A stretch of DNA of 64,000 nt from IMGVR_UViG_3300042691_055965:1-64000, one strand, 5' to 3'; counted from the first letter of the stretch, positions 8,986-58,807 are shown. Notes: generated from the letters alone by a model not told the origin. Numbers and translations: made by a program.

Positions 8986-9071
8986 ATATAGATATGTATG
9001 CTTTAGTTGTTACTCCAATTATGATTTTAGTTTCTTTTGTTCTTGTAAGTTTATATAGGAACAGAAAGTAA
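8982..9071 (+). CDS. Unannotated 29-aa single-TM peptide
   Basis: Hand-translated MNIDMYALVVTPIMILVSFVLVSLYRNRK*; ATGA overlap with the T9SS gene stop. Confidence 0.5.
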   Translation: MNIDMYALVVTPIMILVSFVLVSLYRNRK

Positions 9072-9104
9072 ATAGTTTTAGAAAGATTTGTGATATTTAT
9101 ATGT

Positions 9105-10865
9105 ATGACAAATCTTTCAAAAATTTCGTTGGTAATATCAGCCTTTCTGATGTTATTGTTCCTGTGTTCACAATCATTACTTGTTTTTCATTTTATTGAA
9201 TATGTAGATATGATAGGGTATTTTGGTTACGCCATAATACTAGCATTTATCCCATTTTTTTCTGTGTTTGCATATGAATATGTTAAAAGAAACAAAATAG
9301 GTAAGGTAAAAGGTGAATATATAAAAAAACTTAATGAAACAATAATTTCACAATCCCATAATCCATTATTTTATGATGGTGATATTTCTGAAGGAGCAAA
9401 AATTCTAACAAAAGAAGTGTCCACTAATATGGATGTTGATAGATGTTCTGTGTGGCTATACAATGAGGATAGAAGTTCAATTGTATGTCAACAACTATAT
9501 GTTAAATCAGAAAATAGTTGGTATCAGAATATTGAACTACATAAAAAAGATTATTTGGATTACTTCCTTGCTCTTTTGTTAAATCCCGTGATTGTTGCAA
9601 ATGATGCTGAAACTCACCAAGCAACTTCTTGTTTTACTGAATCGTATTTGAAACCTTTGGGTATTAAATCAATGTTGGATGTTCCAATTGTTTATAAGGG
9701 TGACACTATCGGGGTTATTTGTATTGAAAGTTTAGAACCAAAAATGTGGGACAAATGTGAAATTGATTTTGCTCAGATGTTAGCATCACTTTATTCCTTT
9801 TCATACTCCGTAAAAGAAATCAATCGTATAAACAAAACAATAGATGATATTGAGCATTTCATTGATTATTCGGTATTAGTAAGTAAGGCAGACGCAAATG
9901 GTAAAATAACATATGTTAATAAAAGGTTTGAGGATGTATCAGGATGGAAACTAAAACAAGCAATGGGTAAAGACCACAGTATTGTAAATTCAGGTTTTCA
10001 CCCAAAGGAGTTTTGGAAGGATATGTATAAGACAACCGTAAAAGATAGAAAGATATGGAATAAGGTTGTGACAAACAAAAATAGAAATGGTGAAATATAT
10101 TGGGTTGATTCTTATATCATCGCTGAGTTTGATTCTGAAACAGACAAACTAAAAGGATTTATGTCTATTAGATACGATGTAACTGACTTGATGAAAAAAT
10201 CAGAAGAGATTGAAAAAAAGAATACCTATTTGGAACACGCAGCAAAGATATTACGTCACGATATGCACTCAGGTATCAACACCTATATCCCAAGAGGAAT
10301 TAGTTCACTAGAAAGAAGATTAAATGATGATGTAATCAAGGAATTAAAAATTGAATCCCCACTTAAAATGATTAAGGAAGGATTAAAACATTCACAAAAA
10401 GTTTATAAGGGTGTTTATGAATTTACCAATTTGGTTAAAAAAGATTCAAGAATGGGTAAAACTGAATGTAACCTCAAAACTATCTTGGATGAATACCTAC
10501 AATCAACGGCATATAAAAGTCAGGTGATTATTGAGGAATTACCAGTCACTGATGTAAACGAATCTTTATTTTGCACAGCAATTGACAACCTAATCAGAAA
10601 TGGTTTGAAATATAACGATAGTGATACCAAGTTTGTTAAAATATTTATGGAAGAAGACACACTAATTCTACAGGACAATGGTAGAGGGATGACACAAAAA
10701 GATTTTGAATACTTATCCCAACCTTACACAAGAAAACAAAACCAAAAGGAAGGTGGAACGGGACTTGGATTAAACATATGTATCGCAATCTTAAATGAAC
10801 ACGGGTTCAAAATTACCTGTGAGAAAAACGATATTGGAACTAAAATGAAGATTAAACTTAAATGA
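9105..10865 (+). CDS. Sensor histidine kinase 1 (2 TM-GAF-PAS-HisKA-HATPase)
   Basis: GAF (DRCSVWL..SMLDVPI..GVICIE), PAS (ITYVNKRF..SGW..GKDH..IYWVDSYI), H-box ILRHDMHSG, N box DNLIRNGLKYN, G1 DNGRG, G2 GTGLGL; likely ATG at 9105 after TATTTAT. Confidence 0.92.
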   Translation: MTNLSKISLVISAFLMLLFLCSQSLLVFHFIEYVDMIGYFGYAIILAFIPFFSVFAYEYVKRNKIGKVKGEYIKKLNETIISQSHNPLFYDGDISEGAKILTKEVSTNMDVDRCSVWLYNEDRSSIVCQQLYVKSENSWYQNIELHKKDYLDYFLALLLNPVIVANDAETHQATSCFTESYLKPLGIKSMLDVPIVYKGDTIGVICIESLEPKMWDKCEIDFAQMLASLYSFSYSVKEINRINKTIDDIEHFIDYSVLVSKADANGKITYVNKRFEDVSGWKLKQAMGKDHSIVNSGFHPKEFWKDMYKTTVKDRKIWNKVVTNKNRNGEIYWVDSYIIAEFDSETDKLKGFMSIRYDVTDLMKKSEEIEKKNTYLEHAAKILRHDMHSGINTYIPRGISSLERRLNDDVIKELKIESPLKMIKEGLKHSQKVYKGVYEFTNLVKKDSRMGKTECNLKTILDEYLQSTAYKSQVIIEELPVTDVNESLFCTAIDNLIRNGLKYNDSDTKFVKIFMEEDTLILQDNGRGMTQKDFEYLSQPYTRKQNQKEGGTGLGLNICIAILNEHGFKITCEKNDIGTKMKIKLK

Positions 10866-12277
10866 AAAAACTATTATTATTCTTAACAACTTTTATTTTT
10901 GTTGTGAATTCTTATTCACAATTAGAGGCGACTTGGGATCAAGGTGTTCCACTTTGTCCTGAAGACAAATACATTTCAGGTTTGATTGATAAGTTGGGGA
11001 ATAAAAATCTAACAGAACTTGATAGTTTAACTGATAACACAAACCTAAAACTTTTCAGAGAAATTGGTTTTGCGTTTTATGACAAAGGTATGTATGATGC
11101 TGCCGATTGGTATCTAAAAAGAGCAAAAAGATACAAAGAAAAAATTATTGTTGAAAAAACAAAAGACAAAGAAGAAACAAAACCAGAAATATCACAAGAA
11201 GATGCCAAACAAATGAAAAAAGATTTGGAGTTTTTAGGAGGTTTACCAAAATCATATGATAATTTATCAAAAGACGATATGTTGGAGTTGGCAAAAATGA
11301 TTAATAATAAAATTAATCAATTAACTAAAGAAAGGGATTCGATACTTAAAAGTGAAAAACCAAATGAAGAATTACTATCATCAAAAAATAACACAATCAA
11401 ATCATTAGAAAAAGAAAAAGAAGTAATTGATTTAACAATTGAAAGTGATGAATTAAAAGGCGAAACTAAAATATTAAACATAGAAAAGGCGACTTTGAAA
11501 AAGTATTTAACAGGATTAATAATTGGTGCATCAGTACTTATTTTATTCATCCTTGTACTTCTTCAAAGAAAAACAATTAGAGTTAAAGATACAGAAATAG
11601 ATAAACAACTAACCGATATCAATAAGAAAAACAAATACTTAGAATATTCAGCAAGAATCATAAGACACGATATGCACTCTGGTATCAATACTTACATTCC
11701 AAGAGGTATATCATCATTAGAAAAAAGAATCACCCAGGAAGATATTGAAAATCTTAAAATTGCTGCACCCATCAAAATGATTAAAGATGGTTTGAGTCAC
11801 ACACAAAAAGTTTACAAAAGAGTTTATGAATTCACAAACCTTGTAAAACAACAAGTGGTATTAGATAAAAAAGAAACGGACACAACAAAACTATTAACAG
11901 ATTACTTCCAATCCACTTCATATAAGAATCAAGTAGAGATTAGCGAATTAGTAATACTTGATATTAACGACACATTATTTTGTAACGCAATAGACAACTT
12001 AGTTAAAAACGGATTACAATATAACGATAGTGAAGACAAATTAGTTAAGATTTATATGGATAAAAATGACTTAATTGTGGAAGATAACGGTAGAGGGTTT
12101 ACACAAAAGGAATTAGAAACGATAACAGGGAAGTATTTAACTAAAAAGGGGGATTCTGAAATTGGTTTGGGATTAAGTATTAGTAAAACCATTTTAGAAG
12201 AACACGGATTTACAATGACTTGTGAAAAAATTAACAATGGAACTAAAATAAAAATTAAGACAAAAAAAGATGATTGA
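10862..12277 (+). CDS. Sensor histidine kinase 2 (signal peptide, TPR-like/coiled-coil periplasmic region, 1 TM)
   Basis: Kinase core paralogous to HK1: IIRHDMHSGINTYIPRG, DNLVKNGLQYN, DNGRG, GLGL. Confidence 0.9.
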   Translation: MKKLLLFLTTFIFVVNSYSQLEATWDQGVPLCPEDKYISGLIDKLGNKNLTELDSLTDNTNLKLFREIGFAFYDKGMYDAADWYLKRAKRYKEKIIVEKTKDKEETKPEISQEDAKQMKKDLEFLGGLPKSYDNLSKDDMLELAKMINNKINQLTKERDSILKSEKPNEELLSSKNNTIKSLEKEKEVIDLTIESDELKGETKILNIEKATLKKYLTGLIIGASVLILFILVLLQRKTIRVKDTEIDKQLTDINKKNKYLEYSARIIRHDMHSGINTYIPRGISSLEKRITQEDIENLKIAAPIKMIKDGLSHTQKVYKRVYEFTNLVKQQVVLDKKETDTTKLLTDYFQSTSYKNQVEISELVILDINDTLFCNAIDNLVKNGLQYNDSEDKLVKIYMDKNDLIVEDNGRGFTQKELETITGKYLTKKGDSEIGLGLSISKTILEEHGFTMTCEKINNGTKIKIKTKKDD

Positions 12278-14961: not shown

Positions 14962-15142
14962 CTTCTTTGTCTTTCCACTCCAAATATACGGCAAAAATCA
15001 TTAAGAAGTTAATCATTACACACAAAAAAATTTCTAAAAGATAATGCCAATCAATTTGGGTTACACCAACATGAGTTCCTAACCACATAAAAGAACCATA
15101 TTTATTCATTATTTGAACTATAAGGTATTTGAAAAATTTCAT
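14930..15142 (-). CDS. Small membrane protein
   Basis: 70 aa with a hydrophobic helix; TAATG-coupled to the upstream gene. Confidence 0.55.
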   Translation of the reverse strand: MKFFKYLIVQIMNKYGSFMWLGTHVGVTQIDWHYLLEIFLCVMINFLMIFAVYLEWKDKEDEKLQKTTNT

Positions 15143-42927: not shown

Positions 42928-44064
42928 ATGGCAAATAAAAAAATATCAGAATTACCATACATACCAGAATCACAAATTTCAGGGAATACTTTAGTACCTT
43001 TGGTTACTTATTATTCTGCCACGACAGGTGATACTGTTCATACGTATGTTTCAGATTTACAAGATTATTTATTAAGTGGGCAAACAATCACTGGCGGAAC
43101 TTATTCTGCAGGTACTGCCACTTTTACAAATAGTAGTGGTGGTACATTTGATGTTACTGGTTTTACAAGTGGTACTAATTTTGCAAATACTGATTTAACC
43201 TTTACAGGAAATAGAACACATAACACAAATAACAATTATTTGTGGTTACAAACAAATGGAACAACAAGTGGTTCTTCAATCTATATGGATTCCACAAATT
43301 GGATAGACGTAGGATTTAGTAATTCGATTTCTGTTGGTAATTTTACAAGATGGGAACCATCAATAGTAACTCACTACTACCAAACAATCGATAGATTAAA
43401 TTTAAAAAGCACGGAAACCGTTATCAATGAAACGGGTATCGATGTTGATTTTAGAGTTGAAAGTGACACAAATCCAAATATGTTATTTGTAGATGCAAGT
43501 ACAAACAGAGTGGGAATAGGTAAAAGTAACCCAACTGTGGAATTAGATATAAGTGGAGATACTACAAATTCAGGATTATTAAAATCAACTTCAATTTCAG
43601 CAACAACAGTTTCTGCAACCACAATAGTTTTAAGTGGTAGTGATATAACCTCATCTTGGACATCATATGTACCAACATGGTCATCAAATGGTATAACACA
43701 ACCAACCATAGGTGACGGTTCGATTACGGGAGCATACAAAGTTATTGGTAAAACGTGTTTTTATAGAGGTAAGTTACTTTTTGGAACAACAACATCAGGA
43801 GGGTCGGGAGCATGGGAAATTTCTTTACCTTTTACCGCCGCATCAGCAGACGGAGTTCAATTACCTGTTTCAATTTTGGATCAGGGTATTGATTGGTATC
43901 AAGGGTTAATGAATGGTTCTTACGGAGGTTTTACAACTAAAAGTTCAATACTCGCCCCATCAACATTATCCATAGGTAAAAGCTCAGGTTTGGATGCAAC
44001 TTTACCATTCACTTGGGGTAATAATGATTATTTTGTTTGGAATGGTTCTTACGAAATTGCGTAA
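42928..44064 (+). CDS. Tail fibre protein with receptor-binding-type tip
   Basis: MANKKISELP start; DFRVESD..LFVDASTNRVGIG; C-terminal WTSYVPTW..GAYKVIGKTCF..ISLPF. Confidence 0.7.
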   Translation: MANKKISELPYIPESQISGNTLVPLVTYYSATTGDTVHTYVSDLQDYLLSGQTITGGTYSAGTATFTNSSGGTFDVTGFTSGTNFANTDLTFTGNRTHNTNNNYLWLQTNGTTSGSSIYMDSTNWIDVGFSNSISVGNFTRWEPSIVTHYYQTIDRLNLKSTETVINETGIDVDFRVESDTNPNMLFVDASTNRVGIGKSNPTVELDISGDTTNSGLLKSTSISATTVSATTIVLSGSDITSSWTSYVPTWSSNGITQPTIGDGSITGAYKVIGKTCFYRGKLLFGTTTSGGSGAWEISLPFTAASADGVQLPVSILDQGIDWYQGLMNGSYGGFTTKSSILAPSTLSIGKSSGLDATLPFTWGNNDYFVWNGSYEIA

Positions 44065-44528
44065 ATCCTTTCTTTACTGCCAACAATTTGTTTGTACCAT
44101 TTACCCTTTTCATCTAACCACACATACGGATTTTCGGGATTTTCTATCCACCCATGTTTAGAATAATAATCCAAATCTTTTCGTAATAAATTTGCTCTAT
44201 GGGATGAATGAAATTCTTCATTTTCTAACCAATCGGGTAAAACAAATTCACCTTCAATTCTTTCATATTCCATAGTGTTTTTGAAACCACGCTCAACCCA
44301 CACATCGATGCAATCGTTATAGTATTGTTTTAGTGCATTTACATAAGGACGCCACATTACAGAACAAGGATGATTTAACCATCCCTTGTATGGTTTTCCA
44401 TCTTTTCGAAGTCTTCCTGTGATAGCGGATATAATTTGATATGCTTCGACACGTTGTTTACCCAAACGTTTGTTGTCTAAAGATTCTAAAGATTTTCTGA
44501 AATCGGAATATGGAAGGAATGTTTGCAT
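44049..44528 (-). CDS. MSMEG_6728-like / pyrimidine dimer DNA glycosylase (endonuclease V-like) family protein
   Basis: MQTFLP..LDNKRLGKQRVEAYQI, W.NHP..MW, SHRANLLRKD. Confidence 0.8.
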   Translation of the reverse strand: MQTFLPYSDFRKSLESLDNKRLGKQRVEAYQIISAITGRLRKDGKPYKGWLNHPCSVMWRPYVNALKQYYNDCIDVWVERGFKNTMEYERIEGEFVLPDWLENEEFHSSHRANLLRKDLDYYSKHGWIENPENPYVWLDEKGKWYKQIVGSKERIYAIS

Positions 44529-44566: not shown

Positions 44567-45232
44567 TTATTTTTTATTTTTCTTACTCATATATTTACCT
44601 AATTTCCATCCATTACTTAAATAAAAATTAATTTCATTAGGGTTTACCATTTTATTGTCCGTACCTTTAGTCATACACTTTTTACCATATACTGAATTTT
44701 TTTCCCCAACACCCGTACCTTTTTTCATTTCACTTAATTTTTTCTTTGTTTCATCGGTGTGTTTTTTTCCTTTCCAATCATAAAAATATTTTTTATCTCT
44801 TCTACCATCAAGATATTGTTGTTTATTCGCTTTACTTAATTTTTCTGAAAATTGTTTTCTATATTCGTCATCTTTCATTTTTTCTAAAAAGACTTCATTA
44901 CCCCGTTTACAGGTTTTTACCATATGGTTTTTATCAATGAATCCACCGCCCCCACCTAATTGTAGGTTCATACAAAGTTTTTCAGAAATCAACTGTTGAT
45001 TGACAATTTCTTTTTCTCTTTTTTTTAGAATTTCTCTGTTTTCACAAAACTCAATAATTTCTTTGATGTGATTTTCTTTTCCATGATAGTTTAATGAACG
45101 CCATAATCTTTTACCACTACCAAGATAACCATCGTTCAGTGTGTTGGTACTGTGCATACCAATATAATATTTGTTATTCAACAAACAAGTTGTTTTATAA
45201 ATGTAGTGATATTTTTTTTGTAGTCTCGCCAT
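44567..45232 (-). mobile_element. Free-standing GIY-YIG (Seg-like) homing endonuclease with NUMOD3-type tail
   Basis: YIYKTTC..KYYIGMH..YLGSG; GKKHTDETKKKLSE..GEKNSVYGK; minus-strand TATTTAT at 45248-45254. Confidence 0.8.
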
Positions 45233-45280
45233 ATCTATATTTTATATATAAATATGGCGATAAGTACAAAACTTCCGGCG

Positions 45281-45697
45281 TGGAGGTGCGGAGAGTCGAA
45301 CTCCGGTCCATAACATCCTGTCAGATAAGGACTACACGTTTAGGTTAAGGTTTTTCATACCTTCCAAAATATTTGGTTCCTATTTTGACATTGTTACCAA
45401 CAACTGTGTCGAGTTCACTTTTGTTACGGTAGCACTCTGAACGAGACCGTTTGTTTCTTTTCGGGTAGAAACCACACCTTTGTAAAGACTTCTGTTGCTA
45501 GGTTATATGTCCACCGACCCCCCGTTTCCGTGCTTAACTTAAGCTACAGTAACTTCTTCAGTTGAAATTAAACCAACCACTGAAAGGTTTTCTAAAACGT
45601 CGCCATTTGCAACTTGAATCAGTTTTTAAGGAGATTAATTCAGTCCCCACGTGCCCTTATTCTTCAGCCAATGCCTGTCAAATCCAAAACCACCCCC
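45281..45697 (-). ncRNA. ssrA: tmRNA (417 nt), tag ANGDVLENLSVVGLISTEEVTVA*
   Basis: 5' GGGGGTG..TTGGATTTGAC pairs with 3' CACCTCC-A including the G3:U70 Ala determinant; T-arm CCGGAGTTCGACTCTCCG; tag ORF 45610..45539. Confidence 0.92.
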
Positions 45698-45722
45698 ATA
45701 TTTTCAAAGAACTTTCTTAATA

Positions 45723-45730
45723 CAAATATA
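45723..45730 (-). promoter_or_regulatory. Bacteroidota -7 element upstream of the tmRNA
   Basis: TATATTTG about 25 nt upstream of the mature 5' end. Confidence 0.6.
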
Positions 45731-45773
45731 TGTATAATATTAAATATATCCAAATTTAAGTATATTTATTTAT

Positions 45774-46952
45774 ATGAAAAAAAGAAGAAAATTATTTGAA
45801 GACGAATCAGAAGAACTATCTGACTTCAAAAAAATTCTTGCAATAAATAAAAAAAGGATTTCTTATAGGGATGTTGACTTTTATAACTCAGAAGGTAAAG
45901 ATTTTTCAGATATTATTGAAATAACCCAAGACGGATTATTATTCACTTTCGATGGTGGACTTGTTGAATACTTACAGTTTTTCTTTCCTGACGAATTTGA
46001 AGAAGGTTCTGATAGTTACTATGATGCTCAAATGTATGATTATATGTATGCCGGAAATTATGATTGGTATTCTGAATTTTCTGACAGATATTATGATGAT
46101 TGGGGTGAAGGATACATATTGGATGCCTTGAATGACAATCAAGTAGATAAATTGAAAGAAATTGTATCCATAGTTTCACCCACAATGGTTAATTATTTTT
46201 ATACTTCAGATCAGGGAAGAAAAAAAATAGGTAGAGATAGTAATGAAGTACAAAAAATTATTGATTTATTGACTACATTAGGTTTTGAAAGTTCTTTTCT
46301 AGATGCATACATTGAAGGAAGTGTTTCTGCGGTTAGAAACAGTGCTGCTGAATATATAAAAGACATATATTGTAATTGTTTAAAAGAAGCTATTGGGCTT
46401 GAAAACTACAGCCAAAGATACTGTTTTTGGAAATACGAATTATCTTGGGGTGATATAGTTTTGTTATATGCTAGATTTGGTTCACCAGAAGATAATCTTT
46501 ATGATTTACTTTTTGAAGCAATAAAAAAATCAAGCATAAAACATGCACCTGAACATTATGAAATTCAACATTATGTTTGGGACAATCAAAGATTTAGTGA
46601 AACTTTCAATCCAGAAATGGATAACATTTTAGATAATAAGTATGATGAAATTTTGGATGACGAAGAGTATTCAAAAGATTATATTGACGTATTAAATAAA
46701 GTTTCATTAATTGGTGGTACTGATAGTTGGATTAAATCGAAAAATGGTAAGTATCAAATTCGTATATTAAAGATAGACCCAAAAACTTTAAAAATAGATT
46801 ATTCTGTTTCTGACAAAAGTAACAATTGGAGTTCTAAAAAAGGAAGAACAACTATTGATGAGTTAATTAATTTGTTAAACTATGAAAGTTTGTTCCATCC
46901 TTCAGAATTTCGGGAACAGTTATTAAGGAAGTTTAGAAATTCTATCCTTTAA
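45774..46952 (+). CDS. Acidic hypothetical protein
   Basis: 392 aa; overlapping TATTTAT copies at 45763-45773. Confidence 0.75.
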   Translation: MKKRRKLFEDESEELSDFKKILAINKKRISYRDVDFYNSEGKDFSDIIEITQDGLLFTFDGGLVEYLQFFFPDEFEEGSDSYYDAQMYDYMYAGNYDWYSEFSDRYYDDWGEGYILDALNDNQVDKLKEIVSIVSPTMVNYFYTSDQGRKKIGRDSNEVQKIIDLLTTLGFESSFLDAYIEGSVSAVRNSAAEYIKDIYCNCLKEAIGLENYSQRYCFWKYELSWGDIVLLYARFGSPEDNLYDLLFEAIKKSSIKHAPEHYEIQHYVWDNQRFSETFNPEMDNILDNKYDEILDDEEYSKDYIDVLNKVSLIGGTDSWIKSKNGKYQIRILKIDPKTLKIDYSVSDKSNNWSSKKGRTTIDELINLLNYESLFHPSEFREQLLRKFRNSIL

Positions 46953-47975
46953 CATTTCATAAAGAGATATACAATCTTCATTTGAAATGAAAATTGATGT
47001 ATCCACATCCATTAAAATAATACCATCTTCATATTCAGACACATCAATTTCTTCGAACTGATGGTGGGTATTTTCATTTAATTCAATTAAAGAATTCATC
47101 ACGGTTTGATTGGTATATACTATTGGTTTATATTCATATTCATATTTTTTCAAACCAAGAACATCAACCATATTTAACCCTGCGGTTAATGCTTTTTGAA
47201 CATCTTCTAATGAAATAAATTCTTGTGATGAATGCATGTTATAATATCCACAGGACATATTGATGCAAGATACATTAATTTTCTTTTTTAATTGTGAAAT
47301 GTCCGTATAAGGGTGTGATTGAACAAGCATTTCATTTCCAAATGATTTTTCAATTGTTGAAATAACTTTTTCATAAAATTCACTATTTCTATCAAATAAT
47401 CGAACTCCCGAGCATATCTCGGTAATTAAATGATTTCCTGGTGCATCATATTGTGTGATATAACCAACATCTTGTAAAAAATCTTCATCACATTTTTGTG
47501 AACCGTGGCAACCTGTTTCTTCTGAAACAAAAAGTCCAACTTTTACTTTGTCCAATCTTTTTAAAAGTTCCAAACAAATAAAAATTCCACATTTGTCGTC
47601 ACCACCAATACCTGTTGGGTTTCCATGTACATCATATGCTTTCAAACAATCAACCTTTTCACTTGTAAAAACTTTTCCAAACGTTGCGGGTCTTGTAAGT
47701 TTTTCTTTTTTTACAATTATTTTATCAATTTTGTGGTGAACGGTGTCTGTGTGAGCAACAAACATTGGGTAGAACTCTCCGTCAGAAAGTTCACCCTTTG
47801 TTGCATATATATTCATCATATTGTCCCGATAATATTTGACACCGGGAATCGTATCAAGTTCATTACAAAGATATTCAACCATATCTTCTTCTTGATACGT
47901 TTTTGATGGAACTGAAAGAAGTTCTTTAAATTTTTCTAAATTGTACACAGATATATATTTTTTATAAAAATACAA
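46923..47975 (-). CDS. M28/M20-family metallo-aminopeptidase-like protein
   Basis: VAHTDTVH, IGGDDKCG, SEETGCHGS, YTD, GYYNMHS; true start may be GTG at 47948. Confidence 0.85.
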   Translation of the reverse strand: MYFYKKYISVYNLEKFKELLSVPSKTYQEEDMVEYLCNELDTIPGVKYYRDNMMNIYATKGELSDGEFYPMFVAHTDTVHHKIDKIIVKKEKLTRPATFGKVFTSEKVDCLKAYDVHGNPTGIGGDDKCGIFICLELLKRLDKVKVGLFVSEETGCHGSQKCDEDFLQDVGYITQYDAPGNHLITEICSGVRLFDRNSEFYEKVISTIEKSFGNEMLVQSHPYTDISQLKKKINVSCINMSCGYYNMHSSQEFISLEDVQKALTAGLNMVDVLGLKKYEYEYKPIVYTNQTVMNSLIELNENTHHQFEEIDVSEYEDGIILMDVDTSIFISNEDCISLYEMLKDRISKLP

Positions 47976-47996
47976 AAAATTTTATTAATAACAAAA

Positions 47997-50045
47997 TTAT
48001 TGTGTTTTTATTTTTCTTTTTGTTGGTTTTTTTATTTTAATATCTGTTTTATCTTCTTTTTGATTGTATGATAAAATAAACTTGGAATTTTTTTCTGGGT
48101 TATCAGAAAGGATTTTATCTGTTATATAATCGTCAACCCATTTCTGAACCGTTCTTTTTAAAATCCTTGCTCCAAACCTTGTATCAGTTCCAATTGAAAT
48201 AATATGTTTTTTCAAGGTATCGTCAACCTCAACATCAAATTCAATTTTTCTAACTCTTTCATATACTTTTTCCAATTCCAAATCAATAATTTCCATCAAG
48301 TTATCTTCATCCAAATCTTTGAAATAAACAATATCATCAAATCTATTTATAAATTCTGGAACAAATCTTTTGAAAAGTTCTTTTTCCAACACTGATTTTA
48401 TTTCTTCTTCTTTTTGTTCAATTTTTGTTGCCGTCGAAAATCCTACACCTGTTCCAAATTGTTGAACGGCTCTTGTTCCAACATTTGATGTCATCAATAT
48501 AATACAATTTTTGAAATTGATTTTTCTTCCATGTCCATCGGTTAAAAATCCTTCATCGAGCATTTGCAAAAACACATTGAAGATTTCAGGGTGGGCTTTT
48601 TCAATTTCATCAAGTAAAATAACAGAATATGGTTTGTTTTTAATTTTATTCAAAAAAGGAGAACCATCATCATATCCAACATAACCTGGCGATGTTCCTG
48701 TTAATTTTGATGTTGATATTTTATCTGAAAATTCGCTCATGTCAAGTCTGATAAGAGCATCTTCTGAATTGAACATATGTTTTGCAAGTTGTTTTGCAAG
48801 TTCCGTTTTTCCAACACCGGAATTACCAATTAAAAGTCCACTGAATATCGGTCTTTTTGGATCGTTCAAACCAACTTTATTTCTTTGGATAGCTCTTGCA
48901 ATTTTTGCAATTGCATCATCTTGTCCAATAACCTTTTTATTAAGTGTGTCCTTTAATGTTTTAAGTTGTTCTGATTCATCAGTTGTGATTTTATTGATTG
49001 GAATTTTTGTCATAAGTGACACAACATCATAAACAATATCTTCTGTTACTTCTCTTTTGAAAAGGTTTCTATTTTTTTCAAATTCATCTTTTTCCTTTTC
49101 AAGCTCAAGAAGTATTTTTCTTTCTTTATCTCTTAAATTTGCTGCTTCTTCGTACTTTTGACTATTAATAACTCGAATTTTTTCCTTTTTAATGTCTTCT
49201 GCCTTTTTTTTCAAATCTTCGATAATTTCAGGTAATTTGATTTCAACTTGCGACCTGGCACCAACCTCATCGATTATATCAAACGCCTTGTCAGGAAATT
49301 CTCTATCTGTGATGTAACGATCAGCCAATTCAACACAAAGTTTTAATATGTCATCACTGTACTTTACCTTATGATAATCTTCATACCTTTCTTTTGTATT
49401 ATACAAGATTTCAAGTGTTTCTTCTTTTGTTGACGGATCTACCATTACCTTTTGAAACCTCCTTTCAAGTGCTCCGTCCTTTTCAATGTTTTTTCTATAT
49501 TCTTCAAGTGTTGTTGCTCCAATACATTGTAATTCACCACGGGACAGGGCTGGTTTGAAAATATTTGATGCATCCATTGTACCTGATGCGTTTCCTGCAC
49601 CAATCATTGTATGAATTTCATCGATGAAAATAATAATGTCAGGATTTGCATAAAGTTCTTCCATTATAACTTTCATTCTTTCTTCAAATTGTCCTCTGTA
49701 TTTTGTTCCTGCAACAACAGATGTCATGTCTAATGAAACAATTCTTTTATTTGCCAAATTTTGGGGACAATCACCTTCGAATATTTTCTTTGCAAGTCCT
49801 TCAATAATTGCTGTTTTTCCACAACCAGGTTCACCAAGAACGATTGGGTTGTTCTTTTTTCTTCTTGATAAAATCTGTGCAATTCTATTGATTTCGTTTT
49901 CTCTCCCAACAATCGGGTCTAGTTTTCCTTCTTCTGCTAGTAATATTAAATCTCTTGAAAAATTATCCAAAACGGGGGTTTTTGACGAACCTGTTGATTG
50001 TGATTTGTTTTTGGATTTTTCGTTGCTATCTGCTGAATCAATCAT
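47997..50045 (-). CDS. clpC: ClpC-like double AAA+ ATPase lacking the N-terminal Clp repeat domain
   Basis: Walker A GEPGCGKT and GNSGVGKT; Walker B IFIDEIH and ILLDEIEKAHP; UVR motif YEEAANLRD; GVGF ClpP-docking loop. Confidence 0.9.
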   Translation of the reverse strand: MIDSADSNEKSKNKSQSTGSSKTPVLDNFSRDLILLAEEGKLDPIVGRENEINRIAQILSRRKKNNPIVLGEPGCGKTAIIEGLAKKIFEGDCPQNLANKRIVSLDMTSVVAGTKYRGQFEERMKVIMEELYANPDIIIFIDEIHTMIGAGNASGTMDASNIFKPALSRGELQCIGATTLEEYRKNIEKDGALERRFQKVMVDPSTKEETLEILYNTKERYEDYHKVKYSDDILKLCVELADRYITDREFPDKAFDIIDEVGARSQVEIKLPEIIEDLKKKAEDIKKEKIRVINSQKYEEAANLRDKERKILLELEKEKDEFEKNRNLFKREVTEDIVYDVVSLMTKIPINKITTDESEQLKTLKDTLNKKVIGQDDAIAKIARAIQRNKVGLNDPKRPIFSGLLIGNSGVGKTELAKQLAKHMFNSEDALIRLDMSEFSDKISTSKLTGTSPGYVGYDDGSPFLNKIKNKPYSVILLDEIEKAHPEIFNVFLQMLDEGFLTDGHGRKINFKNCIILMTSNVGTRAVQQFGTGVGFSTATKIEQKEEEIKSVLEKELFKRFVPEFINRFDDIVYFKDLDEDNLMEIIDLELEKVYERVRKIEFDVEVDDTLKKHIISIGTDTRFGARILKRTVQKWVDDYITDKILSDNPEKNSKFILSYNQKEDKTDIKIKKPTKRKIKTQ

Positions 50046-55191: not shown

Positions 55192-56967
55192 ATGGCGTTA
55201 TCAAAAGAACAAGCACTATTAGAATATGCAAAATGTGTAAAGGACACACCCTACGCACTTAAAACATATTTGCAAACTTACGATAACACACAATCAAAAT
55301 ATGTTCCGTTAGAACTGTTTAATGATCAAGTAACACTTGTAAAAGATTACGATGAATGTGAAGAAAACATCGCACTTAAATATCGACAAGCAGGTGTATC
55401 AACAGTAACATCTGCATGGGCTTCCAAAAGACTTGTTTTTGCAAGAAAGGAAAAACCTGAAAAAATTCTTATAATCGCTAACAAATTGGACACGGCAGTC
55501 GAAATGGCAAACAAAGTTCGTGCGTTTGTTGATCAGTGGCCGAAATGGATGGGTGTAACATTTTCAAATGAAAAAAATTCACAAAGACACTTTAAATTAA
55601 CTAATGGGTGTGAAGTGAAGGCGGTTGCAACATCAAAAGATGCACTTCGTGGTTATACACCAACGATACTAATATTTGACGAAGCGGCGTACATTGATGC
55701 CGATGAAGATTTTTGGTCTGCGTGTATGGCGTCTTTATCAACAGGGGGTAAAGTTATTGTAATTTCAACACCAAACGGATTCGACCCAATTTACTACTCT
55801 ATATACAGTCAAGCAATCAAAGGAATGAATGACTTTAGAATAACAGAAATGTATTGGTATCGTGATCCACGATATTCAAAAGATTTAAAACTTATAAAAT
55901 GTGATGACATTGTTCACTATATGCTGAATAGAAGTGATTATAATGATAATGAAATCACATTAGACTATAGTCAAATAAAAGTTAGTGACAGAAATTTTCC
56001 TGAAATAAAAGAAAAAATTGAAAATGGTTATAAGGCATATAGTTCTTGGTTCGAGGCTATGGCTAAAAAACTTAAATTCGATAAGAGAAAAATTTCACAG
56101 GAATTAGAATGTAACTTTTTAGGTTCAGGGGATAATGTAATCCCACCTGAAACTATGAAAAAAATAAAAGAAAACCATATCAAAGAACCTGAAAATAAAT
56201 TTATGGGTGGTGCTCTTTGGCAATGGAAAGAACCAATTGCAGGACACCGATATATTATGGGTGTTGATGTATCAAGAGGTGATAGTGAAGATTTTAGTAC
56301 AATATCAGTGATTGATTTTGACAATAGGGAACAAGTATTAGAATACATGGGAAAAATTCCACCTGATGTACTTGCAGAAATCGCATATAAATGGGGAACT
56401 ATGTATAACGCCTTTATTGTTACCGATATAACGGGGGGTATGGGTGTTTCTACATCAAGAAAACTACAAGAACTAGGATATAGAAATTTATATGTTGATG
56501 GAGTAAATCCAGCAGATAAATGGAAGTGGAACCCTAAGGCACAAGATAAAATACCGGGAATTAATTTTAATGCAAAAAGAGTTTTAATTATACAAGCGTT
56601 TGAAGAAGCGTTAAGATATGACTTTTCTTTAAAATCACAAAGATTATTTAATGAACTAAATACGTTTGTATATGTGAATGGTAGACCTGATCACCAAAAA
56701 GGACAACATGATGACTTAATTATGTCTTTTGCAATGGCGATATATGTTGCTGAAACTTCTTTTGCACAATTGGAAAAAGCAACAGAACAAACTAAGGCAA
56801 TGATTGAATCTTGGCAAGTTGAATCAAAGGTTCATGCCGATCCAACAAGAAGTTTTAATCCAGGTATACCTGTTGATGTTTATGGTATGAACAATTTCCC
56901 AAAAAGTGGACCGACTAAAAGTGACTATGAAAACTATTTATGGTTATTCGGTAAAGGAAGGGTTTAG
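55192..56967 (+). CDS. terL: Terminase large subunit (T4 gp17-like)
   Basis: KYRQAGVST Walker A, ILIFDEAA Walker B, VISTPNG, nuclease GVDVSRG and HDDLIM. Confidence 0.95.
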   Translation: MALSKEQALLEYAKCVKDTPYALKTYLQTYDNTQSKYVPLELFNDQVTLVKDYDECEENIALKYRQAGVSTVTSAWASKRLVFARKEKPEKILIIANKLDTAVEMANKVRAFVDQWPKWMGVTFSNEKNSQRHFKLTNGCEVKAVATSKDALRGYTPTILIFDEAAYIDADEDFWSACMASLSTGGKVIVISTPNGFDPIYYSIYSQAIKGMNDFRITEMYWYRDPRYSKDLKLIKCDDIVHYMLNRSDYNDNEITLDYSQIKVSDRNFPEIKEKIENGYKAYSSWFEAMAKKLKFDKRKISQELECNFLGSGDNVIPPETMKKIKENHIKEPENKFMGGALWQWKEPIAGHRYIMGVDVSRGDSEDFSTISVIDFDNREQVLEYMGKIPPDVLAEIAYKWGTMYNAFIVTDITGGMGVSTSRKLQELGYRNLYVDGVNPADKWKWNPKAQDKIPGINFNAKRVLIIQAFEEALRYDFSLKSQRLFNELNTFVYVNGRPDHQKGQHDDLIMSFAMAIYVAETSFAQLEKATEQTKAMIESWQVESKVHADPTRSFNPGIPVDVYGMNNFPKSGPTKSDYENYLWLFGKGRV

Positions 56968-57007: not shown

Positions 57008-58807
57008 ATGGCACAAGACAAATATACAATATGGCAAAGGTTGAGTAAGACATTCGGTCCAAGTGCTACACTCGATCAACAATCACCCGTATTCAAGTTC
57101 GATAAAAAAGAACTATTAAAAACAACAGATAAACAAGAATATGAAGTTGAAAAACTTCAAGCACAACAAACTGTTTATTTGGGTAAACAATGGCAAAAGG
57201 TTGAATCTAACCTTTACCAACAAGCAGTATATTATGAACCAACAAGAATGGCTTCATATTATGACTATGAATCAATGGAATATACACCTGAAATATCGGC
57301 AGCTCTTGATGTTTATGCTGAAGAATCTACAACACCCGATAAAGATGGTGATATATTAAAAGTTTATTCTGAATCAAAAAGAATTAAATCTGTTTTGACT
57401 GATTTATTTGTCACCAGAATGGATATTAATACAAATCTCCCAATGTGGACAAGAAACACTTGTAAATTTGGTGACAACTTTATTTATTTGAAATTGGATC
57501 CAGAAAAAGGTGTTGTAGGATGTCAACAATTACCGAATATCCAAATTGAAAGATTGGAAAAAGGGATGCGTTTTCAACCTGACAAGTATTCACAAGAAAT
57601 GGAAAACGATGCATTGAAGTTTGTATGGAAAGAAAAAAACATGGAATTCAATCTTTGGGAAGTAGGACATTTCAGAATATTAGGTGATGACAGAAAACTT
57701 CCTTACGGAACATCTATGTTAGAAAAAGCAAGAAGAATTTGGAAACAATTATTACTTTCTGAAGATGCTATGTTAATATACAGGGTGTCAAGAGCACCTG
57801 AAAGAAGAGTGTTTAAGGTATTTGTTGGAAACATGGATGATAAAGATGTTGACCCATATGTACAAAGAGTTGCAAACAAATTCAAACGAGATCAGATTGC
57901 TGATCCCAAAACAGGTAACGTTGATATGAGGTACAATCAGTTGGCAGTCGATCAAGACTTCTTTATTCCTGTTAGAGATCCGGCACAAACAAACCCAATA
58001 GAGACATTACCTGGTGGTACAAACTTGGCGGAAATCGCAGATATTGAATATATCCAAAAGAAATTGGTTACCGCACTTCGTGTACCAAAGGCTTATTTAG
58101 GTTTTGAAGAAGCGGTGGGTGATGGTAAAAACTTATCATTACTTGATATTAGATTTGCAAGAACAATCAATAGAATCCAAAAATCAATGTTGGCGGAATT
58201 GAATAAAATTGCGATTATACATTTATTTTTGTTAGGGTTTGAAGATGAATTAACAAATTTCAGTCTTGGACTTCACAACCCATCCAAACAAGCAGATTTA
58301 CTTGGTGTGGAAGTATGGAAAGAAAAAATTACGTTATACAAAGACGCTGTTGCACCGATTCAAGATTCAGTTGCTCCTGTTTCAGCGTCATGGGCTAAGA
58401 AACACATACTTGGATTTAGTGATGAAGAAATTAGACTTGACTTACAACAACAGAGGGTTGAAAGAGCGGTTGCTGCTGAACTTGGTAAAACTGCAGAAGT
58501 TATTACTAAAACAGGATTATTTGATAATATCGATAATTTATATGGTAAAAAGGATTCTGAACCTGCAGGGGCACCTGCTGAAGGTGGAGGAATGCCTCCT
58601 GAACCAGGAGGTGGGGCACCTCCACCACCGAGTGAACCACCAGCAGGTGGTGAAGCCGCAGTAACACCTGAAAGATTTGTTAAAGATGGGTTAGATTTGA
58701 TACTAGAAGAAACGTTATTTTATGGAAATGATACACTAGATTTGTCCAAAGGAAAAAATTCTCTTGTAGAAATAAATGAAAAACTTAACGATTTAATCAA
58801 CAAGTAA
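57008..58807 (+). CDS. Portal protein (T4 gp20-like)
   Basis: YGTSMLEKARRIWKQL.L.EDAMLIYRVSRAPERRVF, ETLPGG.NL.EIADIEY..KKL..AL.VP. Confidence 0.95.
   Translation: MAQDKYTIWQRLSKTFGPSATLDQQSPVFKFDKKELLKTTDKQEYEVEKLQAQQTVYLGKQWQKVESNLYQQAVYYEPTRMASYYDYESMEYTPEISAALDVYAEESTTPDKDGDILKVYSESKRIKSVLTDLFVTRMDINTNLPMWTRNTCKFGDNFIYLKLDPEKGVVGCQQLPNIQIERLEKGMRFQPDKYSQEMENDALKFVWKEKNMEFNLWEVGHFRILGDDRKLPYGTSMLEKARRIWKQLLLSEDAMLIYRVSRAPERRVFKVFVGNMDDKDVDPYVQRVANKFKRDQIADPKTGNVDMRYNQLAVDQDFFIPVRDPAQTNPIETLPGGTNLAEIADIEYIQKKLVTALRVPKAYLGFEEAVGDGKNLSLLDIRFARTINRIQKSMLAELNKIAIIHLFLLGFEDELTNFSLGLHNPSKQADLLGVEVWKEKITLYKDAVAPIQDSVAPVSASWAKKHILGFSDEEIRLDLQQQRVERAVAAELGKTAEVITKTGLFDNIDNLYGKKDSEPAGAPAEGGGMPPEPGGGAPPPPSEPPAGGEAAVTPERFVKDGLDLILEETLFYGNDTLDLSKGKNSLVEINEKLNDLINK

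What the first reader, a model, noticed from the sequence alone, without database searches (positions are those of the whole stretch)
45281..50045. Candidate phage proteostasis module: N-domain-less ClpC + M28 peptidase + tmRNA
Seen: three co-oriented minus-strand genes within 5 kb, interrupted by one plus-strand ORF. The ClpC starts almost directly at the D1 module (PVLDNFSRDL), so it lacks the adaptor/pArg-binding N-domain, but keeps the UVR/M domain and the GVGF ClpP loop. Inference: an adaptor-independent unfoldase that recruits host ClpP, possibly recognises the phage tag, and feeds peptides to the aminopeptidase, recycling amino acids or removing host defence proteins.
Basis: partly seen in the sequence, partly recalled or inferred. 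Interest (0 to 1): 0.6.

Follow-up and report, generated by a model that had tools for sequence, protein, structure and literature searches.

The report
Phage N-less ClpC, aminopeptidase, tmRNA cluster
A roughly 290-kb T4-like phage of freshwater Bacteroidota carries, side by side, a ClpC unfoldase that naturally lacks its regulatory N-domain, a zinc aminopeptidase and its own tmRNA with an unusual 21-residue tag; these look like a phage-owned ribosome-rescue and protein-recycling kit, but no experiment yet shows that the parts work together.

Summary
The minus strand carries a tmRNA (45278-45697), a clan-MH metallo-aminopeptidase (46923-47948) and a 682-aa ClpC (47997-50045). The ClpC starts 23 residues before D1 and keeps the M-domain, both pore loops and the VGF ClpP-docking loop. 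One conserved plus-strand ORF of unknown fold (45774-46952) lies between the tmRNA and the peptidase.

Two corrections:
- The peptidase is M42/PepT-like, not M28.
- ARAGORN's tag is wrong. Comparison gives (A)GDVLENLSVVGLISTEEVTVA, unlike the 9-residue ...LAA tags of Bacteroidota.

The DNA is phage, not host. It has a T4-type portal and terminase, and relatives include a 321-kb genome with terminal repeats. A type IX secretion sorting domain and the ClpC tree point to a Bacteroidota host.

All 77 complete cellular relatives examined keep the N-domain; at least three phage groups lack it. The cluster is conserved across a phage family down to 57% ClpC identity, with the peptidase in either orientation. 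It is absent around the N-less ClpC of other phage groups, and part of the conservation is general synteny beside the terminase/portal block.

Sister lineages encode their own ClpP; the window's lineage does not, so it would have to use host ClpP. Functional coupling of tag, unfoldase and peptidase is plausible and fits published ΔN-ClpC biochemistry, but it is inferred.

The parts
45278..45697 (-). Phage tmRNA (ssrA), one-piece. The acceptor stem has a G3-U pair. The CCA end is not encoded.
   Evidence: Rfam RF00023 scores 97.3 bits, model positions 1-374; ARAGORN also finds it. The sequence was read. Homologues lie next to the orf392 homologue in 36 of 36 distinct close loci and within 10 kb in 17 of 22 loci of the deeper family.
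45539..45604 (-). Tag reading frame of the tmRNA: resume codon GGC, 21 codons, then TAA. It encodes GDVLENLSVVGLISTEEVTVA, preceded by the Ala carried on the tmRNA.
   Evidence: An alignment of 34 distinct tmRNAs has no indels across the 63 nt. Column entropy by codon position is 0.53 / 0.16 / 0.69. The bases upstream read YANNY-GGC. ARAGORN itself finds equivalent long G-start tags in deeper relatives.
45774..46952 (+). Conserved ORF of 392 aa with unknown function and no recognisable fold, convergent with the peptidase.
   Evidence: No Pfam, PHROG or NCBIfam hit. The AF2 model has pLDDT 88.5. Foldseek against the PDB finds nothing at E<=0.001, the best VIA-wide Z is 5.8, and the ESM Atlas finds nothing. 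Homologues of 22-55% identity sit beside the peptidase in both family groups.
46923..47948 (-). Clan-MH di-zinc-type aminopeptidase (M42/PepT-like), 341 aa from the GTG start. The ORF listing gives a TTG start at 47975.
   Evidence: phrog_4191 'peptidase', E 2.7e-40. Pfam M42 scores 25.5 bits, just over its cut-off. NCBIfam PepT-like hits fall below their cut-offs. The AF2 model (pLDDT 75.8) matches TET M42 aminopeptidases, PepT and the DapE catalytic domain. H75, D77, D126, E152, E153, D177 and H248 are invariant in 16 homologues. The start codon was checked.
47997..50045 (-). ΔN-ClpC: a class-I Hsp100 unfoldase with D1, a short M-domain and D2, but no Clp_N domain.
   Evidence: All 77 complete cellular relatives are 807-910 aa and carry a 137-212 aa N-terminal extension. 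No Clp_N domain is present in five phage genomes.
49041..49238 (-). M-domain coiled coil (about residues 270-335), with the tip aromatic Y298 at 49152-49154.
   Evidence: Aligns to the S. aureus ClpC M-domain with a single one-residue gap; Y298 corresponds to F436. The Y or F is conserved in 159 of 163 viral ClpC copies examined.
48438..48446 (-). V534-G535-F536, the ClpP-docking tripeptide in D2.
   Evidence: Position confirmed against S. aureus ClpC. [VILM]-G-F is present in 79 of 81 close copies and 43 of 45 copies of the deeper family; most copies without it come from loci that stop short. The docking mechanism is described in PMC11005422.

Best explanation
This is a phage-owned trans-translation and proteolysis gene cluster in a T4-like jumbo phage (about 290 kb) that infects freshwater Bacteroidota.

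Shown by sequence:
- The phage encodes a complete tmRNA whose tag frame is under protein-level constraint. It specifies a 21-residue tag ending in ...EEVTVA. Bacteroidota tags are 9 residues and end in [LM]AA.
- It encodes a ClpC derived from Bacteroidota ClpC that has lost the N-domain. It keeps both ATPase modules, both pore loops, the M-domain and the VGF ClpP-docking loop.
- It encodes a clan-MH aminopeptidase with an intact metal site.
- These genes, together with one unknown ORF, are kept together across a deep phage family.

Inferred mechanism:
- During infection, host AlaRS charges the phage tmRNA and host SmpB delivers it. None of the five phage genomes searched has smpB.
- The tmRNA frees ribosomes stalled on damaged or truncated mRNAs and marks the nascent chains with the phage tag.
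- The ΔN-ClpC hexamer has no N-domain, the part that represses ClpC and gates its pore. It docks on ClpP without the usual N-domain-binding adaptors. In this lineage the ClpP is the host's; in sister lineages it is phage-encoded.
- The hexamer threads substrates recognised directly at the pore, probably including proteins carrying the phage tag.
- The aminopeptidase trims the released peptides to amino acids for phage protein synthesis.
For: Phage context:
- T4-type portal and terminase lie at 55-59 kb.
- The same arrangement is seen in more than 100 IMG/VR contigs, including a 321-kb genome with direct terminal repeats.

Host:
- A phage ORF carries an SprB repeat and a CHU_C type IX secretion sorting domain.
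- The nearest cellular ClpC are Bacteroidota.
- The nearest cultured-phage peptidases are in Cellulophaga phages.

ClpC:
- establish the domain architecture and the loss of the N-domain.

ClpP:
- It is absent from the window's record and from relatives that are 99% and 96% complete.
- It is present once in each of five sister-family genomes and in three huge phages with N-less ClpC. So N-less ClpC and ClpP go together in phages.
- Complex prediction on ClpC D2 with two copies of B. thetaiotaomicron ClpP gave weak support: score 0.40, best control 0.00. The runs agreed in at least 90% of contacts and the partner's pLDDT was at least 70. In the calibration, 51 of 78 solved complexes and 2 of 108 mismatched pairs reached the mark, but scores of 0.60 or under are more often wrong than right without a strong prior.

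Literature:
- S. aureus ΔN-ClpC binds ClpP without an adaptor and has raised ATPase activity. The ssrA degron is read by the pore, not by the N-domain. ΔN-ClpC-F436A degrades GFP-ssrA as well as MecA-activated wild type (PMC12583610).
- The Mtb ClpC1 N-domain is dispensable for ClpS-mediated control of ssrA-substrate unfolding (PMC6274998 abstract).
- LGF-loop docking on ClpP is shown structurally (PMC11005422).

Tag:
- define it; host-phylum tags are.

Linkage:
- In the close group, 22 of 22 distinct loci have the peptidase downstream of clpC and 36 of 36 have the tmRNA next to the orf392 homologue.
- In the deeper family, 21 of 25 have the peptidase and 17 of 22 have the tmRNA within 10 kb.

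No ClpS or MecA was found in five phage genomes.
Against: - No experiment or expression data exist. No RNA run holds the region.
- Linkage is not specific proof. In the deeper family the upstream genes up to the terminase and portal are conserved as well, so much of the signal is ordinary synteny.
- The peptidase is on the opposite strand in 13 of 21 deeper loci. In close relatives up to 5 kb of unrelated genes on both strands separate it from clpC.
- Other phage groups with N-less ClpC have no peptidase or tmRNA within 10-20 kb.
- The peptidase family occurs in many small phages that lack ClpC.
- In S. aureus, ΔN-ClpC with an intact M-domain tip aromatic is proteolytically inactive and forms ClpC/ClpP rods. 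The phage keeps that aromatic (Y298).
- Nothing shows that ...TVA is a degron for any Clp ATPase.
- The complex prediction gives only weak support.
Confidence: 0.45

Rival explanations
1. The genes are independent auxiliary genes that are merely co-inherited. The tmRNA only recycles ribosomes. The ΔN-ClpC is a general unfoldase or protease partner, used for host takeover, chaperoning or removal of misfolded phage proteins. The peptidase has its own role. They sit together because this stretch lies beside the conserved terminase/portal block.
For: - Upstream neighbours up to the terminase and portal are conserved in 16-19 of 22 deep-family loci, about as often as the peptidase.
- The peptidase flips strand and tolerates inserted genes.
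- Peptidase homologues occur in about 350 phage records, most of them small phages without ClpC.
- N-less ClpC in other phage groups has no tmRNA or peptidase nearby.
Against: - The genes on the other side (denV, the 378-aa ORF, tail genes) are lost in the deep family, while the peptidase, orf392 and tmRNA stay within 4-8 kb of clpC despite rearrangement.
- The three functions form a known pathway in bacteria: trans-translation, then Clp proteolysis, then peptide trimming.
Confidence: 0.3
2. The ΔN-ClpC is a saboteur rather than a working protease. Either it ties host ClpP up in inactive head-to-head ClpC/ClpP rods, or it mixes into host ClpC hexamers and deregulates them. Either way it disables or misdirects host Clp proteolysis, for example to protect phage proteins or to blunt a ClpP-dependent defence.
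For: - S. aureus ΔN-ClpC forms ClpP-bound rods through M-domain tip contacts and is proteolytically inactive. Deregulated ClpC mutants are toxic (PMC12583610).
- The tip aromatic is conserved in the phage proteins.
- The phage ClpC is 50-56% identical to Bacteroidota ClpC, which may be close enough to co-assemble.
Against: - Sister lineages and huge phages with N-less ClpC bring their own ClpP. That makes sense for a working protease, not for a ClpP sponge.
- Walker motifs and both pore loops are strictly conserved, as expected for an active threading machine.
Confidence: 0.12
3. The phage tmRNA's long non-canonical tag is not a degron. It rescues ribosomes while keeping products away from host ClpXP, or it competes with host tmRNA for SmpB so that host quality control is re-routed. 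ClpC would be unrelated to it.
For: - The tag ends in TVA, not LAA, and is 12 residues longer than the host-phylum tags.
- No smpB was found in the five phage genomes searched, so the phage RNA must compete for host SmpB.
- A tmRNA-like molecule consisting of little more than the tRNA-like domain strongly inhibits tmRNA, perhaps by titrating SmpB (PMC4131195).
Against: The whole 21-residue tag, not only the tRNA-like domain, is conserved at the protein level across the family. That argues some partner reads the peptide.
Confidence: 0.1
4. The region is host DNA at a prophage border, or an assembly chimera. ClpC and the tmRNA would then be host genes, since tmRNA genes are classic integration sites.
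For: - IMG/VR labels the record 'provirus'.
- ClpC and tmRNA are typical cellular genes.
Against: - Phage structural and packaging genes lie on both sides and GC is uniform at about 30%.
- The same arrangement occurs in more than 100 viral contigs from 14 or more studies, including a complete genome with terminal repeats.
- All 77 complete cellular ClpC examined have the N-domain.
- The host-phylum tmRNAs differ in tag and sequence.
Confidence: 0.03

Closest known systems
Bacterial ClpC (S. aureus and B. subtilis ClpC, Mtb ClpC1; Bacteroidota ClpC)
   Same: It is 50-56% identical to Bacteroidota ClpC and nests among them in the tree. The best PDB matches are ClpC in one stretch. D1 and D2, the KYRG and GYVG pore loops, the short M-domain with its tip aromatic and the VGF loop are all present.
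   Different: It lacks the roughly 140-170-residue Clp_N domain. That domain binds MecA, McsB/phospho-arginine and cyclic-peptide antibiotics, and it stabilises the resting state. Only a 23-residue Ser/Lys-rich leader is left, corresponding to the linker between the N-domain and D1.
Engineered ΔN-ClpC of S. aureus (PMC12583610) and ΔN-ClpC1 of M. tuberculosis (PMC6274998)
   Same: The architecture is the same: linker, D1, M-domain, D2. The laboratory constructs bind ClpP without an adaptor, have raised ATPase activity and, with the M-domain tip mutated, degrade ssrA-tagged GFP.
   Different: The phage protein is a natural, conserved gene in at least three phage groups. It keeps the tip aromatic, which makes the S. 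aureus construct form inactive rods. Its activity is unknown.
Phage-encoded tmRNAs (mycobacteriophages such as Bxz1, Bacillus phage G, huge phages)
   Same: It is a complete one-piece tmRNA in a large phage genome (PMC4131195; PMC7162821).
   Different: Here the tmRNA sits next to a Clp unfoldase and an aminopeptidase. Its family-conserved 21-22-residue tag ends in V-x-V-A rather than LAA. No phage smpB is present, whereas some huge phages carry one.
M42 TET aminopeptidases and peptidase T (M20B), clan MH
   Same: The fold matches (Foldseek probability 1.00, E 1e-9 to 1e-8). The invariant H/D/E/D/H pattern fits a co-catalytic metal site.
   Different: Sequence identity is only 13-18%. Only Pfam M42 passes its cut-off, and only just; NCBIfam PepT models fall far below theirs. 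There is a C-terminal extension of about 70 residues, partly modelled with low confidence.
ClpCP systems of huge phages (LR745206, LR756502, LR756508)
   Same: Their ClpC is also N-less (49-55% identical) and has the G[VI]GF loop.
   Different: Those phages carry 1-3 clpP genes of their own. They have no peptidase or tmRNA near clpC, and only LR756508 has a true tmRNA, about 360 kb away.

Membership tests
ClpC (class-I Hsp100/Clp ATPase that partners ClpP) | Two AAA+ modules with Walker A/B motifs and the pore loops KYR (D1) and GYVG (D2) | tested here: met
   Pfam AAA, AAA_lid_9, AAA_2 and ClpB_D2-small. The motifs are visible in the alignment to S. aureus ClpC and conserved in 162 of 163 (KYRG) and 160 of 163 (GYVG) viral copies.
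ClpC (class-I Hsp100/Clp ATPase that partners ClpP) | Short single coiled-coil M-domain with a UVR-like motif and a tip aromatic (not the long ClpB M-domain) | tested here: met
   Aligns to the S. aureus ClpC M-domain with a single one-residue gap; Y298 corresponds to F436. ClpB structures match only in two separate stretches.
ClpC (class-I Hsp100/Clp ATPase that partners ClpP) | ClpP-docking (I/L/V)-G-F loop in D2 | tested here: met
   V534-G-F536, conserved across the phage groups. Actual binding was not measured. The complex prediction gave weak support only: 0.40 against a best control of 0.00.
ClpC (class-I Hsp100/Clp ATPase that partners ClpP) | N-terminal Clp_N repeat domain (the site for adaptors and phospho-arginine) | tested here: not met
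   The ORF starts 23 residues before D1. PF02861 is absent from five phage genomes. It is present in all 77 complete cellular relatives.
ClpC (class-I Hsp100/Clp ATPase that partners ClpP) | Phylogenetic placement among bona fide ClpC | tested here: met
   FastTree places the phage clades inside Bacteroidota ClpC. The branches are long and the tree is a quick one.
tmRNA (Rfam RF00023) | Covariance-model score above the gathering threshold, over the full length | tested here: met
   97.3 bits against 47, model positions 1-374.
tmRNA (Rfam RF00023) | tRNA-Ala-like domain with a G3-U pair in the acceptor stem | tested here: met
   Read directly from the sequence: 5' GGGGGUG pairs with CACCUCC at the 3' end, giving G3-U. 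Aminoacylation itself cannot be tested with these tools.
tmRNA (Rfam RF00023) | Internal tag reading frame with a resume codon and an in-frame stop | tested here: met
   GGC at tmRNA position 94 through TAA at 157-159. Substitutions are periodic by codon position and there are no indels in 34 sequences. ARAGORN finds the same frame in relatives.
tmRNA (Rfam RF00023) | Canonical C-terminal degron (...[AV]LAA or similar) | tested here: not met
   The tag ends in EEVTVA. Family variants end in AVA, VVA, VAA, VLA or VEA. Bacteroidota tags end in LAA or MAA.
tmRNA (Rfam RF00023) | SmpB partner | tested here: not met
   No PF01668 hit in the window's record or in five related phage genomes. Host SmpB would be needed, which is an inference.
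Peptidase family M28 | Match to the M28 profile | tested here: not met
   The Pfam scan returns only M42 (25.5 bits, cut-off 23.2) and M20 (22.7 bits, below its cut-off of 24.6). No M28 hit. An M28 structure (Vibrio aminopeptidase, 3b3v) ranks below M42 and M20 in Foldseek.
Clan MH metallopeptidases (M20/M28/M42) | Alpha/beta catalytic fold with co-catalytic metal ligands (H, D, E, D/E, H) and a general-base Glu | tested here: met
   Foldseek probability 1.00 to M42, PepT and DapE. H75, D126, E152/E153, D177 and H248 are invariant. Assigning each residue to a ligand role is an inference.
Peptidase family M42 (TET aminopeptidases) | Self-compartmentalising dodecamer with an inserted PDZ-like dimerisation domain | not tested
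   Only a monomer was modelled, and the oligomeric state is unknown.

The most novel reading that the evidence does not exclude
The phage runs a private degradation channel. Its tmRNA adds an orthogonal 22-residue degron (A-GDVLENLSVVGLISTEEVTVA) that host ClpXP reads poorly. The phage's deregulated, N-domain-less ClpC reads it directly at its pore. Stalled-ribosome products, mostly host proteins from degraded host mRNAs, are then shredded on ClpP and trimmed to amino acids by the neighbouring aminopeptidase. The N-domain was lost, possibly more than once, during phage capture of clpC because that loss removes host control over the unfoldase.
Probability: 0.2. Interest if true: 0.8.

Novelty: new variant of a known kind. 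Interest (0 to 1): 0.62.

Why it matters
ClpC is normally held in an inactive resting state by its N-domain and switched on by adaptors. Removing or drugging that domain deregulates the protease and kills cells, which is how several anti-tuberculosis natural products act. Phages appear to have made the same cut in nature, in at least three groups. In one large freshwater family they keep the cut gene beside their own tmRNA, with a non-host tag, and an aminopeptidase.

If the parts cooperate, this would be the first viral system that both labels proteins and degrades them on its own terms. It would explain why big phages carry tmRNAs. It would also supply a natural adaptor-free ClpC and an orthogonal degron for targeted protein degradation in Bacteroidota.

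If the parts do not cooperate, the finding still documents three things. There is a widespread natural ΔN-ClpC. ARAGORN misreads or misses most of these phage tmRNAs and their tags. And the host phylum of an abundant, uncultured jumbo-phage family can be named.

Tried and rejected
- ARAGORN's tag EKKQTVSFRVLP was rejected. The program flags it as not identified and it is not conserved. ARAGORN found the tmRNA in only 11 of 80 close loci; nhmmer found it in about 52.
- The 'M28' label was rejected.
- The host-DNA or prophage-border reading was rejected (see the rival explanations).
- orf392 stays unexplained: Pfam, PHROGs and NCBIfam, the ESM Atlas, Foldseek against the PDB and VIA-wide (best Z 5.8) gave no usable match.
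- Genes inserted between clpC and the peptidase in relatives are not ClpP or adaptors. They give no hits or DUF2927 only.
- ClpS, MecA, SmpB, Clp_N and ClpP were not found in the window's lineage. A weak tblastn ClpP hit at record position 176720 lies in an unrelated 249-aa ORF that does not resemble ClpP.
- The sigma-70 promoter scan is not above chance (31 sites against 36 expected) and found no intrinsic terminators. The Bacteroidota -7 box TAnnTTTG is not enriched in the window (131 against 115 ± 9.6), so the transcription units remain undefined.
- No RNA run holds the region.
- Complex prediction on ClpC D2 and B. thetaiotaomicron ClpP gave weak support only (0.40, best control 0.00). The reference CLPP_FLAJ1 is not held.
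- Rfam finds no intron in the clpC interruption seen in relatives.
- The first IQ-TREE-style build did not finish, so FastTree was used instead.
- An early nhmmer run on the distant loci had failed silently. It was repeated properly and found no tmRNA there.
- The large representative-protein search was not used, because the word search and the locus scans answered the question.
- Literature searches for phage-encoded ClpC, ClpP or ClpB, or for this gene combination, found nothing. That library covers open-access papers only.

Full report
**What is there**

The window is the first 64 kb of a 229-kb IMG/VR virus record, estimated 76% complete. Between 45.2 and 50.1 kb the minus strand carries three genes.
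- A tmRNA at 45278-45697. ARAGORN finds it, and Rfam RF00023 scores 97.3 bits against a gathering score of 47, full length.
- A 341-350-aa peptidase at 46923-47948, with an alternative TTG start at 47975.
- A 682-aa Clp ATPase at 47997-50045.

A 392-aa plus-strand ORF (45774-46952) lies between the tmRNA and the peptidase. It is convergent with the peptidase and overlaps it by 30 nt. Next to the tmRNA are a NUMOD3-type homing endonuclease (44567-45232) and a denV-like pyrimidine-dimer glycosylase (44049-44528).

**Phage, not host**

- A T4-type portal (57008-58807, Pfam Portal_T4, E 4.5e-75) and a T4-type large terminase (55192-56967) lie just beyond the cluster. Tail-like genes lie on the other side.
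- GC is uniform at about 30%.
- The same arrangement recurs in more than 100 viral contigs. These include genomes rated 96-100% complete, one of them 321 kb with direct terminal repeats.
- The stretch is present in DNA from 14 freshwater or lake studies.

**Host**

The host is very probably a member of Bacteroidota.
- The phage ORF at 6775-8985 has an SprB repeat and a CHU_C type IX secretion sorting domain.
- The closest cellular ClpC are almost all Bacteroidota.
- The closest cultured-phage peptidases are in Cellulophaga phages.

**The ClpC**

- It aligns in one stretch to S. aureus ClpC residues 145-807 (E 5e-204) and to B. subtilis ClpC residues 143-798. ClpB structures match only in two pieces.
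- Walker A and B motifs, the KYRG and GYVG pore loops, and the short M-domain (QKY298EEAANLRD, where Y298 corresponds to S. aureus F436) are all present. So is the ClpP-docking tripeptide V534-G-F536.
- Only 23 Ser/Lys-rich residues precede D1. Upstream is a 118-nt AT-rich spacer leading to a divergent gene.
- No Clp_N domain is encoded anywhere in this record or in four related genomes.
- All 77 complete cellular relatives examined are 807-910 aa with a 137-212-residue N-terminal extension.
- The close phage relatives (83-95% identical) are all about 671-701 aa.
- N-less forms also occur in a deeper family (57-63% identical), in a huge-phage group that includes LR745206 and LR756502, in LR756508, and in a further IMG/VR group.
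- A FastTree places the phage clades inside Bacteroidota ClpC on long branches. Well-supported branches force at least two gains or losses of the phage label. LR756508 is a very long branch, so this should not be over-read.
- The VGF-type loop, the M-domain tip aromatic and the pore loops are conserved in nearly every viral copy.

**ClpP and adaptors**

- No ClpP is present in the window's record or in two relatives that are 99% and 96% complete. This holds for the Pfam profile and for a sister-phage ClpP used as query.
- Five genomes of the deeper sister family each encode one bona fide ClpP, 25-50 kb from clpC.
- The three huge phages encode one to three ClpP copies.
- So phage N-less ClpC usually travels with ClpP. 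The window's lineage would have to use the host's ClpP; B. thetaiotaomicron gives a ClpP hit in the control set.
- ClpS, MecA and SmpB are absent from five phage genomes.
- A complex prediction of ClpC D2 (residues 395-665) with two copies of B. thetaiotaomicron ClpP gave weak support only. The score was 0.40 and the best of three controls was 0.00. The runs agreed in at least 90% of contacts and the partner's pLDDT was at least 70. By the tool's calibration, 51 of 78 solved complexes and 2 of 108 mismatched pairs reach the mark, but passes at 0.60 or under are more often wrong than right unless the guess was already likely. A solved ClpC-ClpP complex also exists, so the model may be recalling it.

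**What the literature says about this architecture**

- For S. aureus ClpC, deleting the N-domain destabilises the resting state. It raises ATPase activity and allows ClpP binding without MecA.
- The ssrA degron is read by the central pore, not by the N-domain.
- ΔN-ClpC-F436A degrades GFP-ssrA as well as MecA-activated wild type and is more toxic than F436A.
- ΔN-ClpC with the intact tip aromatic forms head-to-head ClpC/ClpP rods and is proteolytically inactive (PMC12583610).
- The Mtb ClpC1 N-domain is dispensable for ClpS-mediated control of ssrA-substrate unfolding (PMC6274998 abstract).
- LGF loops dock into pockets formed between adjacent ClpP subunits (PMC11005422).

The phage gene is therefore a natural counterpart of a well-studied laboratory deletion. 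One open question remains: the tip aromatic is retained.

**The tmRNA and its tag**

- ARAGORN's tag for the window is flagged 'Tag not identified'.
- An alignment of 34 distinct family tmRNAs shows a frame from a conserved GGC (tmRNA position 94, window 45604) to TAA (window 45541-45539). The frame has no indels, and column entropy by codon position is 0.53 / 0.16 / 0.69.
- The five bases upstream read YANNY. From my own knowledge, this resembles the UAGUC before the E. coli resume codon.
- The encoded tag is GDVLENLSVVGLISTEEVTVA.
- Family variants keep three features: G-[ND] at the start, a central G-L-[ILV], and a hydrophobic V-x-V-A-type end. ARAGORN itself reports the long G-start tags in several deeper relatives.
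- Four Bacteroidota genomes give 9-residue tags: GENNYALAA, GENTYALAA, GNTQYAMAA and DNTSYRLAA.
- The phage RNA resembles these host tmRNAs only in the tRNA-like ends.
- The record has no tRNA genes.

**The peptidase**

- phrog_4191 'peptidase', E 2.7e-40.
- Pfam M42 is just above its cut-off, M20 is below its cut-off, and M28 gives no hit. NCBIfam PepT-like models fall far below their cut-offs.
- An AF2 model (pLDDT 75.8) matches M42 TET aminopeptidases, peptidase T and the DapE catalytic domain at Foldseek probability 1.00. An M28 enzyme ranks lower.
- H75, D77, D126, E152, E153, D177 and H248 are invariant in 16 homologues, as expected for a co-catalytic metal site.
- Homologues occur in about 350 phage records, most of them small phages without ClpC.

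**The plus-strand ORF**

It is conserved beside the peptidase at 22-55% identity and folds confidently (pLDDT 88.5). It has no family or fold match. Its role is unknown. An adaptor or regulator role is possible, but that is speculation.

**Linkage**

Close group (ClpC at least 80% identical):
- 22 of 22 distinct loci with enough flank have the peptidase downstream on the same strand. The gap ranges from 25 to 5124 nt.
- 36 of 36 have the tmRNA within 64-1069 nt of the orf392 homologue.
- The inserted genes are unknown ORFs on both strands.

Deeper family (ClpC 57-63% identical):
- 21 of 25 loci have the peptidase next to clpC, 13 on the opposite strand and 8 on the same strand.
- 17 of 22 have the tmRNA within 10 kb.

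Counter-evidence:
- In that deeper family the upstream genes up to the terminase and portal are conserved about as often (16-19 of 22). The genes on the far side (denV, tail genes) are not.
- In the other N-less-ClpC groups no locus has the peptidase downstream of clpC (0 of 24) or a family-type tmRNA within 10 kb (0 of 19).
- LR745206 and LR756502 have no true tmRNA at all. LR756508 has one about 360 kb from clpC.
- So linkage is real and old within one family, but it is not universal and part of it reflects general synteny.

**Conclusion**

Every functional link (tag to ClpC, ClpC to host ClpP, ClpP products to the peptidase) is inferred.
- I put about 0.45 on the integrated pathway, about 0.3 on independent co-inherited genes, and smaller weights on a ClpP/ClpC-sabotage role and a non-degron tmRNA.
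- I found no description of this gene combination, or of natural phage ΔN-ClpC, in the searchable literature. Phage tmRNAs as such are known.

Noticed in passing
L067:7995-10529, L064-L066, L070, L076, L079; L063:6094-9824 and L068: In some close relatives clpC is broken inside the Walker-A codons (window ClpC residues 75-80). The insert is about 0.48 kb in one set and about 1.7 kb, with extra ORFs, in another. The first 133 residues of the downstream piece hit Pfam Intein_splicing weakly (E 2.6e-4 and 8.9e-3, below the cut-off), and Rfam finds no intron. This looks like an intein or a 'fractured gene' with a split intein. The window's own clpC is intact.
   Followed up: partly
L014:12341-12758 and 15009-15095 (same in L078); also L021 and L042: A second, partial copy of the tmRNA 3' end (positions 324-410) lies 2.3 kb downstream of the full gene, with two unknown ORFs (282 and 384 aa) between them. 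This att-like duplication suggests a small element has inserted into the phage's tmRNA 3' end.
   Followed up: partly
window 6775-8985 (+): A phage ORF carries an SprB repeat and a CHU_C type IX secretion sorting domain. This is a host-phylum marker for Bacteroidota, and the protein may be exported by the host's T9SS.
   Followed up: partly
window 2359-3639 (-) and 44049-44528 (-): The phage encodes a UvrC-like protein (GIY-YIG plus UvrC RNase H endonuclease domain) and a denV-like pyrimidine-dimer glycosylase. These are UV-repair genes, fitting a surface-water lifestyle.
   Followed up: no
window 44567-45232 (-): A NUMOD3-type homing endonuclease (phrog_314, E 2.8e-35) lies directly next to the tmRNA. 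It is present at that spot in only a subset of relatives (for example L020, L050, L051, L053, L071, L077), so it is a mobile insertion.
   Followed up: partly
window 45723-45730 (-) and 47992-47999 (-): Matches to TAnnTTTG, the Bacteroidota -7 promoter box, lie 25 nt upstream of the tmRNA 5' end and over the clpC stop codon just upstream of the peptidase. The motif is not enriched in the window overall (131 against 115 ± 9.6), so this is only a hint.
   Followed up: partly
window 9090-10865 and 10862-12277 (+): Two adjacent paralogous ORFs match phrog_857 and a PHROG annotated as kinase (phrog_10912) in their C-terminal parts.
   Followed up: no
whole record (G000) and loci L002-L081: ARAGORN detects the tmRNA in only 11 of 80 related loci and mis-calls or truncates the tag in most. 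A profile search finds it in about 52. Surveys that rely on ARAGORN probably under-count phage tmRNAs. The 229-kb record also has no tRNA genes at all.
   Followed up: yes
L210:6984-7374 with ClpP at 8881-9450 and full-length ClpC at 10007: An IMG/VR 'viral' contig carries a full-length ClpC, a ClpP and a tmRNA with a 25-residue canonical-ending tag (...QYAVAA). It looks like cellular DNA or a different kind of element, and shows that the viral collection contains host-like ClpC loci.
   Followed up: no
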